DNA of 63,078 bases, the filler included, from Bipalium vagum (lineage: Eukaryota): assembly GCA_037834085.1 (NCBI GenBank). It is 3 parts of 3 records of this genome, joined end to end, with 100 filler letters (N's around TTAATTAATTAA, not from the genome) between each part and the next. Parts side by side here need not be neighbours in the genome. Positions count along the whole stretch, not along the records: positions 1 to 27,266 come from JBBMKC010096968.1; 2 more parts are not named here. One strand, written 5' to 3'. A program made the position numbers and the translations under genes. Position 1 is the stretch's first letter. The number at the start of each line of letters is the position of its first letter. The notes under the pieces were generated by a model that saw only the letters and a program-made list of their open reading frames with translations, ran no database searches and was not told the origin of the DNA. Positions 20,974 through 25,022 of the stretch are shown piece by piece.

Positions 20974-23811
20974 TTATTACGAATTTTGAATAAAGAGCCT
21001 ACCCTCATTGTCTAAATAAAAAAGACCAATGTCGTATGCAGGGCAAAAAGAGATACATGATAAAATCCTTAAAAAACACATTTATGAATGGATGTAGAAA
21101 TCGATTATATTGTTCCAAGACATTTTGCCATCTACCAGCAAATTTGAATATCCAAACCTTTAAATTGAATTAAGTTCTTTAAATTTAGATTTAAAGATAG
21201 GTATAAAAAAGCGAAAAAACTTTTGAAACAAACCAATACAAAAAATGCACAAGTTATTTTCGACTTAAAAAAATTACATCCTCATTCTTGCTTTATATTA
21301 TTTATGTTTTTATTCATATATTTTTAAAAAATTGCCACCATGTCTTAAATTTGGAAAACTGAAAAATCAACCGAAATAAGACAATATTGGTTCAAAATAA
21401 TTCAAACTCAAATTTCGCCAAGCCAACAGTGAAAAAAATCTGCGAATTACAATGGAAAGTGTTATATCTTCCATATTCTCTGGATATTCATCAAACCGAA
21501 TAGAGAATACACTGATGATAACATGGAAATCTTTTCGCTTCTGAAGATTCTCAGTTTTATAATAAAAAGATCTATAAAAATGGTTGACCGAATGTGATTA
21601 TTTCAATTGATAACATTTTATTTAGTTACATTTATTATAAATATTTTCATTATTAATAATAATATTCTTATATTATTTTTTTAAACTTATAATACAGGGT
21701 TTGTCATGCCATTTTGTAATTCAATTTTGTTTGAATGAAACTATTACAATTTCACTATTTTTAATTGAGAATAAAGTAAAAATAGGTCCAAAAACAGACT
21801 GAACATATCCGTGCTATTCGATTTTGGACTGATTGTGATTGTGAATTTACATTATAAGTCATAAACACAGATTACAAGAGAAGTATAATATTTCGGTTTG
21901 TGAGAAGACAATTGATAGATACATTGGTTCATCCTATTATTGAAATTAAAATGTATTGATGATTTCTGAAAGTCGCAACGATGAAAGATCGGCTCAAACA
22001 GGCACGGCTATGGTTTAAAAGTTTTCGGTTTACTTTATTTCTGTTTGCTGTGTGATAACTAAAATTGGCATAACAAAACAAAAAGTTTCAGAGTTCAATT
22101 TATTAACATTCTCAAAGTTCTTTAATGAACTTTTATAAGATACTGATTTAATATCTATTTCTAAGGAGGTAACATAATATTCTCCGTTCATGAACCCAAA
22201 TGGTAATTTTTGCCAACTAAAAGCTGTTTATAAGAACACTGTGCTTGACAGCAAACACCATGTCTCAATACACAAGCAATGATTGTGGTGGGTTTTATCG
22301 CACGATTTTATTTGTCTGCATAAATTTACTAACAAATTTGTTATTGTTAATGGTAGATAATTTTAACTTTTTATACGTCCAGGAGGTTTTTTTTGTTTGT
22401 TTTAATTCTTTCACGTATTTTTTACATGTAAATAGTATAACACTTCAGTAACAAAATTATATAATAAATGACGTATATGGAATTAAAAGGTACAGACTTT
22501 TTTGGTTACCGAGTATATAATTTTCTAATAACTAAATCACGAAAACTACTTTTGATTAACGATTGCAGAGTTCATTATCCTTTATTGACTTTCAGGAATT
22601 TTATTATAGATCGACAATGCAATAGATAGTTCCAATAAAAATATTCAAAGGAAATTTTATTATTGAAAAAATATTTTTTACATTAATCATTAATAACGAA
22701 TCATGATAACCTAAATGATTATTACACTCTTAAAAGTCTTCATTTTCAACTTGTATACCTTATACATACAAAATATATGCCAAAATATTTATACATTATG
22801 TATTTAACATAATGGTAAAGAGTATATGAAAGATGAAACAGGTTTAATTTGATCTATAGAATGGATTTTGGCAGTTTAATTTTGGTGTTCACTCAAGAAT
22901 AGGTCGTACCTGTTTTCTGTTTTCCTTGGGGTCTAAACTCAGTCCAAATACATGTCTTCAAGACACAAAAAGGTGAACCAACCAAATCGGAACACTTAAG
23001 CACGTTTAAGATACAAAATTAATAAAGACGTTAAGGTAACGTTAAGATATCTTCCATCTGTTCGAACTCAATTAAAGACCTTTTTGATCAATAAATTGGG
23101 TTCAATTAATCTAATTTATCTTTTTATCTGTCAATCAATGATATTATGCAAAATATATTTATCATAAGCCGATAAGATATATATACGTATATATCTGAGA
23201 AAATAAATGAATGAAATTTTATTTTTATAAACTCTTTGAATTATTTCTTCGAAATCTTATAGATTTCATAGTATATATATATATATAATTAAATATCAGC
23301 AAAAGTTATTATTTGGGAGTTGATACCATTCAGGTTAATAAAATGAAACGGACCTTAACTTTCCTTAACGTGTTTCAAGATACTGACATTGGTCTACTAA
23401 TGACGTAAAGAGCGAAATTTATTTTGAATGAAGATATTGTGAAGACTTGATGCTGTATGTATATATAAGTTCTAACTGACAATATCTCTTGAGTATTATC
23501 TCTAATCTCTGGGATTTCGATGACAAGAAAACCTTTTTTTACATGATTTGTTTTAATTTCCTCATATTTTGATCATGAATTTGGAGAGAGAGATCTTAAA
23601 AGGAATTTTCTATTTTCATATTATATTTATTGTTCAAAGACAAAAATCCTTTGTGTTGGATGACTTTTATTAACTTTTAATCAATATATATTTAAAATAC
23701 CTTTTCTACATTTTTCTCTGTAAAAATTAAATAAATATATTTAATTTTATTAAAAACTTTATTATTTATTTTATATAAACATTTATTCTACTTAAATTGC
23801 TTTTTCAGACT

Positions 23812-23817
23812 TTTATT
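23812..23817 (-). terminator. Putative polyadenylation signal (AATAAA) of the prohormone gene
   Basis: AATAAA on the minus strand about 73 nt after the stop codon. Confidence 0.4.
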
Positions 23818-23889
23818 AATTTTCGAACTACCAAAGTTAATGAAAACAATTTATATTGATAATATCACAAATTTTAAAATAAGTTGTTC

Positions 23890-24443
23890 TTAATATCTTA
23901 TTCCTCCCGTCAAATATCTTTTGTCCAGACCTTTCTTGTAGCGTATTCCTCCGGTTATATATCTTTGACGTTTAATCATTGAAGAAAAATCGTTTAAATT
24001 ATCCAAATCACTGTCGTACAAAGCCTAGTAAAAAAATTAATTCAATGTAAAATTTTAACAAAATAATAAATTTAATCATAAAATATGAATATTCCAACCA
24101 TTCGTTCTCCCAATCTTGGCAATGCTTCGCTAATAGAAACACTCTCAAAAATCAGAATTGTGACTAAAAAAAATAATCAGTGATAATTTATTTTCAATTT
24201 AATAAAAAAAGATAAATCGTTGACATAATGAGAGAAGATTATGCAAATGTATTATTCTAACAAATGTATTATTCTAATTGATTATTCTAACAAAGGAGTT
24301 CAACAGAAATTTCCATTATGACAATTATCTTATATTAAATCTTTTTATAAAATTTTTTTTAATTTTCCAAATTAGTAAAAATATGAAACATATAACAAAA
24401 CATTGAAGGCTGACTTACGGATAGAGGCAATCAATATTTTCAT
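23890..24443 (-). CDS. 1020HH: Neuropeptide prohormone, 74 aa, planarian 1020HH-like; exons 24443-24419, 24163-24099, 24024-23890
   Basis: Spliced: MKILIASILTILIFESVSISEA-LPRLGERMALYDSDLDNLNDFSSMI-KR-QRYITGGIRY-KK-GLD-KR-YLTGGIRY*. It has a hydrophobic signal peptide, an acidic spacer, and dibasic sites flanking two near-identical peptides. GT-AG introns of 255 nt (GTAAGT...TTTTTTAG, phase 1) and 74 nt (GTTGGA...TACTAG, phase 0). The family name comes from recollection of planarian YLxGG(I/V)R(Y/W) peptides and is not search-verified. Confidence 0.88.
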
Positions 24444-24477
24444 ATTTTCTACAAGTATTATAATTGAGAAGATTGAG

Positions 24478-24485
24478 TATTTATA
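24478..24485 (-). promoter_or_regulatory. Putative TATA box of the prohormone gene
   Basis: TATAAATA on the minus strand, 35 nt upstream of the ATG at 24443. The AT-rich background lowers specificity. Confidence 0.45.
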
Positions 24486-25022
24486 CTAAGATGATAAATA
24501 AAATATTTTAAAGAGCCAATTAGAATTTGAAATTCAACATTTATTATAACCAATAGGAGTTTTGTTTATATTGAAAATTTATTGTTAATTATGTTTGCTC
24601 TTTTCTATTTAATTAATATATTATTATTATTATTTTTATTGTTATTATTATTATTATTATTATTATTACATGTATCTAAATAAAATGTTGTTTATTGAAA
24701 TAATCTCATTCGGTCAACAATTTTTAAAGACGTCGTTTTTATAAAACTGAACCAACCTATATTACCAAAAATTGAATAAAAGGTATGCCGTTATACCTCA
24801 AAGATATTAATTCGAAAACAAAAATTATCAATTTAGTTATTGAAATCCTAACACATCCAGTACATATTCATGATATACAACTATCATATTTTCACCTATT
24901 TTAAGTAATGTTTACGTTCTTGAAAGGAAAAAAATTCTAGATAACAATAATTATATTTTATTAATATATATTTATATATATAATTTATTATCCAGATTTT
25001 AAATAATTATTAAAGAATTATA

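What the first reader, a model, noticed from the sequence alone, without database searches (positions are those of the whole stretch)
23890..24485. Complete neuropeptide prohormone gene missed by the ORF track (1020HH-like, two YxTGGIRY peptides)
Seen: three small coding exons (25, 65, 135 nt) with phase-compatible GT-AG introns encode a 74-aa precursor with a signal peptide, an acidic spacer and KR-QRYITGGIRY-KK-GLD-KR-YLTGGIRY-stop, plus a TATA box and AATAAA. Knowledge: this is prohormone-convertase architecture. As I recall, planarian 1020HH prohormones carry YLxGG(I/V)R(Y/W) peptides and have been linked to brain function and phototaxis recovery. Inference: the products are non-amidated (no C-terminal Gly). 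The first peptide could be pyroglutamylated, or trimmed at its Arg to YITGGIRY, giving an I/L pair of ligands. This is also the best taxonomic clue that the DNA is from a flatworm.
Basis: partly seen in the sequence, partly recalled or inferred. Interest (0 to 1): 0.8.

Follow-up and report, generated by a model that had tools for sequence, protein, structure and literature searches.

The report
Planarian 1020HH-2 neuropeptide precursor gene

Summary
On the minus strand, exons 24443-24419, 24163-24099 and 24024-23890 join in frame through GT-AG introns. They encode 74 aa: a hydrophobic leader ending SISEA, an acidic spacer, then KR-QRYITGGIRY-KK-GLD-KR-YLTGGIRY-stop.

The interpretation also holds. 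The published Schmidtea mediterranea 1020HH-2 prohormone (Collins 2010, Table S5) has the same layout. From SISEA to the end, 37 of 57 positions are identical, with equal spacing across the intron-2 junction. YLTGGIRY and pyroGlu-QSYLTGGIRY were sequenced by mass spectrometry there, both with free C-termini. A profile of the exon-3 translations hits proteins named 1020HH from Dugesia japonica and S. mediterranea (E about 1e-8).

New here:
- The genome also holds a 1020HH-1 orthologue, only 64% identical to the Schmidtea one, so this is another planarian species.
- The roughly 1-kb 1020HH-2 unit is present at nine or more places, counting the window copy: two intact near-identical copies, one intact divergent copy, three degenerate short forms, and at least four partial pieces.

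No RNA run exists, so splicing and expression of this copy remain inferred. Verdict: a new member of a known family; low interest.

The parts
24550..24554 (-). Distal inverted CCAAT box (ATTGG) in the promoter
   Evidence: Located. It lies in the CTCCTATTGGTTA block, which is invariant in copies A, B and C. A regulatory role is inferred only.
24516..24520 (-). Proximal inverted CCAAT box (ATTGG)
   Evidence: Located. It is conserved in copies A-F. A regulatory role is inferred only.
24478..24485 (-). TATA box (TATAAATA), 42 nt before the ATG
   Evidence: It is kept in copies A, B, D and E, and altered in C and F.
24419..24443 (-). Exon 1: ATG plus 8 codons plus 1 base (MKILIASI), the start of the signal peptide. 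The donor GTAAGT follows.
   Evidence: There is one synonymous difference from copies B and C.
24164..24418 (-). Intron 1 (255 nt, phase 1, GT..AG)
   Evidence: Indel lengths against the paralogues are not multiples of three (1, 33, 22, 1 against copy B). It contains a 27-nt tandem duplication (D3).
24099..24163 (-). Exon 2 (65 nt): the rest of the signal peptide through SISEA, then LPRLGERM
   Evidence: SISEA is also the last motif of the signal sequence given for Smed-1020HH-2.
24025..24098 (-). Intron 2 (74 nt, phase 0, donor GTTGGA, acceptor TACTAG)
   Evidence: It is 97% identical to copy B and 94.5% identical to copy C. If left unspliced, the frame stops after 9 codons (read).
23890..24024 (-). 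Exon 3: acidic spacer, both peptides and the TAA stop
   Evidence: Pairwise BLASTP against Smed 1020HH-1 gives E 2e-9. The profile search hits named 1020HH proteins.
23938..23967 (-). Peptide 1, QRYITGGIRY, between KR and KK. Predicted masses are 1225.657 Da, or 1208.630 Da as pyroGlu.
   Evidence: The homologous Schmidtea peptide was sequenced as both the Gln and pyroGlu forms.
23893..23916 (-). Peptide 2, YLTGGIRY, after KR and directly before the stop. Predicted mass is 941.497 Da.
   Evidence: It is identical to a peptide sequenced by MS from S. mediterranea. The two peptide units form a 28-nt direct repeat 45 nt apart (D2).
23812..23817 (-). Polyadenylation signal AATAAA
   Evidence: Homology between copies A and C ends just after it.
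23598..24592 (-). The duplicated gene unit (promoter to about 200 nt past the poly(A) signal), shared with copy B
   Evidence: Searches give 87.8% identity over 1031 aligned columns, with non-homologous flanks. Further copies appear.

Best explanation
The locus is a complete gene for a 1020HH-2-type neuropeptide prohormone of a planarian flatworm that is neither S. mediterranea nor D. japonica. Shown from sequence: three exons encode 74 aa with a hydrophobic leader, an acidic spacer and two Y(I/L)TGGIRY units bounded by KR, KK and the stop codon. Inferred mechanism, by homology with the Schmidtea gene. (1) The leader is removed after SISEA. (2) Prohormone convertase 2 cuts at KR/KK and a carboxypeptidase removes the basic residues. 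(3) QRYITGGIRY is released, largely cyclised to pyroGlu, and YLTGGIRY is released, both with free non-amidated C-termini. (4) The peptides are secreted by brain neurons and act on an unidentified receptor, most likely a GPCR, in circuits needed for light-avoidance behaviour. The gene is one of at least three intact-looking copies of a locally amplified family.
For: The gene model is read. It is collinear with cDNA-derived Smed-1020HH-2. From SISEA to the end, 37 of 57 positions are identical with one 1-residue gap. Both proteins have PR, then 7 residues, then YDS, so the 24099/24024 junction reproduces the spacing of a real mRNA. YLTGGIRY is identical to an MS-sequenced peptide. The pyroGlu and free-acid forms were seen in Schmidtea, and the 1141-Da 1020HH-2 peptide fell to 0.64 of control after pc2 RNAi (p = 0.055). 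The profile search hits Q6L8A5_DUGJA '1020HH' at 8e-9 and E3T7U2_SCHMD '1020HH-1' at 1.7e-8 among 5.8 billion proteins, and pairwise E is 2e-9. ATG, splice sites, stop, TATA and AATAAA are kept in copy B, and nearly all are kept in copy C. Exon-3 indels between A and C are 30 and 12 nt, so the frame is kept, whereas intron indels are not multiples of three. A against B has 2 synonymous and 1 non-synonymous change. The leader has MK, then a 12-residue uncharged hydrophobic core, with Ser and Ala at -3 and -1. The same genome has a 1020HH-1 orthologue that also has a phase-1 intron inside its signal peptide.
Against: There is no transcript evidence. The only public run holding the stretch is DNA-like, covers the introns and shows no joint at 24419/24163 or 24099/24024. 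The intron-2 donor GTTGGA is far from consensus. The family includes degenerate copies, so expression of this particular copy is not guaranteed. SignalP was not available. At 24423 all six laid contigs of run X1 read the letter found in the paralogues, not the window's letter; the change is synonymous. The receptor and the function are extrapolated from other species.
Confidence: 0.85

Rival explanations
1. The window copy is a silent or decaying duplicate. The family is real, but another copy (B or an unassembled one) is the one expressed, and this copy only looks intact because the duplication is recent.
For: There are nine or more places holding the unit, counting the window copy, and several are broken or partial. 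A and B differ by only 3 coding substitutions, too few to show selection on either copy. There is no RNA data.
Against: Every signal is intact in A: ATG, both donors and acceptors, the frame, the stop, the TATA box, both ATTGG boxes and AATAAA. The degenerate copies belong to a separate short-form lineage with a 160-nt replacement.
Confidence: 0.1
2. The unit was spread by a mobile element that captured the gene, so the copies are passengers and not a neuropeptide gene cluster.
For: About 0.75-1 kb units sit on different contigs with non-homologous flanks.
Against: No terminal inverted or long direct repeats bound the unit; only AT-rich low-complexity matches were found. No transposase-like ORF is nearby. 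Homology runs from the promoter to the poly(A) signal and includes the introns, as expected of segmental duplication. The assembly is too fragmented (272,664 contigs) to see tandem order.
Confidence: 0.04
3. It is a chance open frame with no gene.
For: The DNA is AT-rich, so TATA-like and AATAAA-like strings are common (one search lists several).
Against: The expected number of paired motifs in the whole genome is about 1e-10. There is also collinearity with a cloned cDNA product and conservation in paralogues.
Confidence: 0.01

Closest known systems
Smed-1020HH-2 prohormone of Schmidtea mediterranea (GenBank BK007025; Collins et al. 2010, PMC2953531)
   Same: Similar size (77 against 74 aa). 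The signal ends in SISEA, followed by (V/L)PR, an acidic YDS..LND spacer, KR-Q.Y.TGGIRY-KK, a short linker, KR-YLTGGIRY and the stop. The second peptide is identical. There is no amidation signal on the main peptides.
   Different: The first peptide is QRYITGGIRY, not QSYLTGGIRY; the extra Arg creates a possible monobasic site. The linker is GLD, not QVPG, so no QVP-amide by-product is expected. About 35% of positions after the signal differ. Here the gene is multi-copy.
1020HH of Dugesia japonica (Q6L8A5_DUGJA) and Smed-1020HH-1 (E3T7U2_SCHMD)
   Same: Same family: a leader, an acidic spacer and repeated Y-L-x-G-G-(I/V/L)-R-aromatic peptides at dibasic sites. Identity to exon 3 is 45% (E 2e-9).
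   Different: These have three peptide units with Lys in place of Thr and Trp/Phe in place of Tyr (YLKGGIRW, NYLKGGLRF). This genome has its own orthologue of that type on another contig (L004).
Schistosoma npp-27 (Sma-npp-27, Smp_134550; Sja-npp-27)
   Same: The C-terminal peptide VPPYITGGIRY shares YITGGIRY exactly with peptide 1 here.
   Different: It has a single peptide copy, a long unrelated pro-region and a trailing Arg. Only the peptide itself is alignable.

Membership tests
1020HH prohormone family (flatworms) | N-terminal secretory signal peptide | tested here: met
   MK is followed by a 12-residue uncharged hydrophobic core (mean Kyte-Doolittle about 2) and then SVSISEA, with Ser at -3 and Ala at -1. 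The signal given for Smed-1020HH-2 ends at the same SISEA. This was rule-based inspection exon by exon; SignalP on the joined protein was not run.
1020HH prohormone family (flatworms) | Two or more Y-(I/L)-x-G-G-(I/V/L)-R-(Y/W/F) peptides bounded by dibasic sites | tested here: met
   KR-QRYITGGIRY-KK and KR-YLTGGIRY-stop. These are the only two motif matches in six frames of the window.
1020HH prohormone family (flatworms) | Significant sequence similarity to named members | tested here: met
   The profile search hits '1020HH' of D. japonica at 8e-9 and '1020HH-1' of S. mediterranea at 1.7e-8. Pairwise E is 2e-9. Pfam has no model for the family.
1020HH-2 subtype | TGGIRY core, two units, Gln-initiated first peptide, last peptide ending at the stop with no Gly for amidation | tested here: met
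   Compared by eye with Table S5 of PMC2953531: 37 of 57 positions identical from SISEA onward, with one 1-residue gap. The published sequence was not typed into an alignment tool.
1020HH-2 subtype | Spliced mRNA expressed in cephalic ganglia neurons | not testable with these tools
   No RNA run holds the stretch. The one run laid is DNA-like contigs without the predicted joints.
1020HH-2 subtype | PC2-dependent processing to free-acid and pyroGlu peptides | not testable with these tools
   Known only for Schmidtea. Predicted masses here are 941.497, 1225.657 and 1208.630 Da.
1020HH family function | Needed for the light response after head regeneration | not testable with these tools
   Reported for the D. 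japonica homologues (citing Inoue et al. 2004).

The most novel reading that the evidence does not exclude
In this planarian lineage the 1020HH-2 gene has been amplified to nine or more places and is diversifying its ligands. Copy C encodes YLTGGMRY and a PP-YLKGGLRY peptide, which mixes the 1020HH-1 and 1020HH-2 motifs and recalls the schistosome VPPY form. Between copies A and C, intron 2 and the 3'UTR stay about 94% identical, while exon 3 is only 77% identical (Fisher p = 1e-4). Even synonymous divergence (0.36-0.48) exceeds intron divergence. This would mean either patchy gene conversion or accelerated evolution of the peptide-coding exon, as in venom and antimicrobial peptide families, applied here to a brain neuropeptide.
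Probability: 0.3. Interest if true: 0.45.

Novelty: new member of a known kind. Interest (0 to 1): 0.25.

Why it matters
The finding gives a clean, complete gene model, with promoter, introns and poly(A) signal, for a neuropeptide precursor that ORF-based annotation misses. It places the DNA in a planarian flatworm. It shows that YLTGGIRY is conserved unchanged across planarian genera, and that the YITGGIRY core is shared with schistosomes. This marks the peptide as a strongly constrained ligand whose receptor is still unknown. The multi-copy state offers natural variants for structure-activity work. None of this would surprise a specialist.

Tried and rejected
- **Word protein search, exon 3 alone:** blank. 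The 44-aa query only admits candidates up to 77 aa, so this says nothing. An alignment of the exon-3 translations (A3) then found the named 1020HH proteins.
- **Pfam and Rfam:** nothing at the locus.
- **RNA evidence:** Laying it showed intron coverage and no canonical joints. Its 23961-to-24122 joint with 26 inserted letters is the short-form paralogue (copy D), not splicing.
- **Mobile-element origin:** no bounding repeats.
- **Copy B as a haplotig of A:** rejected, because homology stops after about 1 kb and the flanks match nothing in the 27-kb window.
- **Steps not done:**
All searches were exon by exon.
  - The large HMMER search was not run, because the operators flagged its cost and the family was already settled.
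  - The published Schmidtea sequence was not typed into an aligner, so identity was counted by eye.
- **Other ORFs in the window:** scanned against Pfam, with no hits apart from a sugar-transporter gene.

Full report
**What is there**

The minus strand of 23700-24700 carries an ATG at 24443.
- Exon 1 is 24443-24419 (25 nt) with donor GTAAGT.
- Exon 2 is 24163-24099 (65 nt) with acceptor TTTTTTAG and donor GTTGGA.
- Exon 3 is 24024-23890 (135 nt including TAA) with acceptor TACTAG.

Translated exon by exon, the pieces are MKILIASI, then a split Leu codon, then TILIFESVSISEALPRLGERM, then a 44-residue piece. That last piece holds the acidic spacer and KR-QRYITGGIRY-KK-GLD-KR-YLTGGIRY-stop. The phases fit (25+65 = 90 nt), giving 74 aa.

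A TATAAA lies 42 nt before the ATG, and an AATAAA lies 73 nt after the stop. The + strand has no ORF of note here.

At the window's base composition, about 0.056 single Y[IL]TGGIRY matches are expected in the whole 440-Mb genome, and about 1e-10 pairs.

**What it is**

Collins et al. 2010 (PMC2953531) list Smed-1020HH-2 in their Table S5. It is a 77-aa prohormone cloned by 3' RACE. Its predicted signal ends in SISEA, and its body runs VPR, an acidic spacer, KR-QSYLTGGIRY-KK-QVPG-KR-YLTGGIRY-end.

Counting by eye from SISEA onward, the window model matches 37 of 57 positions with a single one-residue gap in the linker.

Both proteins have PR, seven residues, then YDS. The predicted 24099/24024 junction therefore reproduces the spacing of a real mRNA product. 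This is the best available support for intron 2, whose donor is weak.

Tables S2 and S3 of that paper report MS/MS sequencing of YLTGGIRY (941.50 Da, the free acid), QSYLTGGIRY and its pyroGlu form.

Independent database support came from a profile of the exon-3 translations of the paralogues (A3). It retrieved '1020HH' of Dugesia japonica (E 8e-9) and '1020HH-1' of S. mediterranea (E 1.7e-8) out of 5.8 billion proteins. Pairwise BLASTP of window exon 3 against the latter gives E 2e-9. Pfam has no model for this family.

**The same genome, other loci**

A six-frame search of the window's own assembly (440.8 Mb in 272,664 contigs) found four exon-3-like places.

L004 is the 1020HH-1 orthologue.
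- Its exon 1 is L004:1365-1404 (MHHKYLFTFLVGI plus one base) with donor GTACGT.
- A 58-nt intron follows.
- Its second exon ends in SSYLKGGVRW-KK-PSVVERRYLKGGLRW-KRR-NYLKGGLRF-stop.
- It is 64% identical to Smed 1020HH-1, so the organism is a planarian other than S. mediterranea or D. japonica.
- Both paralogue types carry a phase-1 intron inside the signal peptide.

A DNA search with the 761-nt unit found at least eight further places, aligned:

| Copy | Contig | State |
|---|---|---|
| B | C207761 | Intact. Differs from A by three coding substitutions, one non-synonymous. Homology ends after about 1 kb and the flanks are unrelated, so it is a paralogue, not a haplotig. |
| C | C29056 | Open. 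Would give YLTGGMRY and SEDKVITPPYLKGGLRY. Its intron-2 donor appears shifted 3 nt (CGA\|GTGGGT), which keeps phase 0. |
| D, E, G | C221983, C260844, C269209 | Short forms. The end of exon 2, intron 2 and the first 63 nt of exon 3 are replaced by about 26 nt, and the C-terminal Tyr is His. Each has its own one-base indel, so they look degenerate. |
| F, H | C261815, C209901 | Partial pieces. |

Two further short matches (C228999 and C219125) were not aligned.

The short form is also present in the public run, as the 23961/24122 joint with 26 inserted letters.

**An oddity**

Between A and C, intron 2 (94.5%) and the 3'UTR (93.6%) are much better conserved than exon 3 (77%) or exon 2 (86%). 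Fisher's test gives p = 1e-4 for exon 3 against intron 2 plus UTR.

Nei-Gojobori estimates over 62 codons are dN 0.20 and dS 0.36. Even silent sites have diverged more than the neighbouring non-coding DNA.

Patchy gene conversion or fast evolution of the peptide exon could explain this. The sample is small and I leave it open.

**How it most likely works**

Shown: the coding architecture.

Inferred by homology:
1. Signal peptidase cuts after SISEA.
2. PC2 cleaves at KR and KK. In Schmidtea, pc2 RNAi lowered the 1141-Da 1020HH-2 peptide to 0.64 of control, p = 0.055.
3. A carboxypeptidase trims the basic residues.
4. The N-terminal Gln of peptide 1 is cyclised.
5. The peptides are released from cephalic ganglia neurons. 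1020HH was 81-fold enriched in dissected Schmidtea brain, and 1020HH-2 was enriched in the lateral ganglia.

Functionally, knockdown of the D. japonica homologues gave regenerated animals that are morphologically normal but fail to respond to light. In a 2024 preprint, 1020HH was among the neuropeptides targeted by RNAi in a UV sensory-gating assay, but the effect was reported only for ppp-1 and spp-1. No receptor is known from the papers searched.

Trimming of peptide 1 at its single Arg (K-R-Q-R, then Y, with a basic residue at P4) is possible but speculative. The product would be isobaric with peptide 2.

**Limits**

- No RNA run holds this stretch. The single run found is DNA-like, so splicing and expression of this copy are inferred.
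- SignalP was unavailable.
- The large HMMER search was not run.

**Verdict**

This is a new species' member of the known flatworm 1020HH-2 neuropeptide family, with a modestly interesting local gene amplification.

Noticed in passing
L004:1365-1668 (G000:C139556, + strand): A complete two-exon orthologue of 1020HH-1 in the same genome. Exon 1 is 1365-1404, followed by a 58-nt phase-1 intron, and exon 2 is 1463-1668. It has three YLKGG(V/L)R(W/F) peptides and is 64% identical to the Schmidtea protein. Two ATTGG boxes lie upstream, as in the window gene.
   Followed up: partly
L002/L006 (C207761), L003/L007 (C29056), L008 (C221983), L009 (C260844), L010 (C261815), L011 (C269209), L012 (C209901): At least eight further full or partial copies of the 1020HH-2 gene unit. 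They comprise one intact twin, one intact divergent copy, three short forms with a 160-nt replacement and private frameshifts, and partial pieces; two of the short matches (C228999, C219125) were not aligned.
   Followed up: partly
window 23812-24163 against L003: Between copies A and C, intron 2 and the 3'UTR are about 94% identical, but exon 3 is only 77% identical, and synonymous divergence exceeds intron divergence. This is unexplained; gene conversion or fast peptide evolution are candidates.
   Followed up: partly
window 100-720 and 5713-6024, + strand: Two open stretches match the Pfam sugar (MFS) transporter family PF00083, at profile positions 266-369 and 394-452. They are probably exons of one transporter gene at the left end of the contig.
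   Followed up: no
window 24423: All six contigs of public run X1 laid here read G where the window has A on the + strand (TCC against TCT on the coding strand, synonymous). This is the letter of the paralogues, so the window copy's own letter is not seen in that run.
   Followed up: no
window 24609-24677: An (AAT)n-type microsatellite sits just upstream of the promoter. Copy F shares the sequence between it and the promoter.
   Followed up: no
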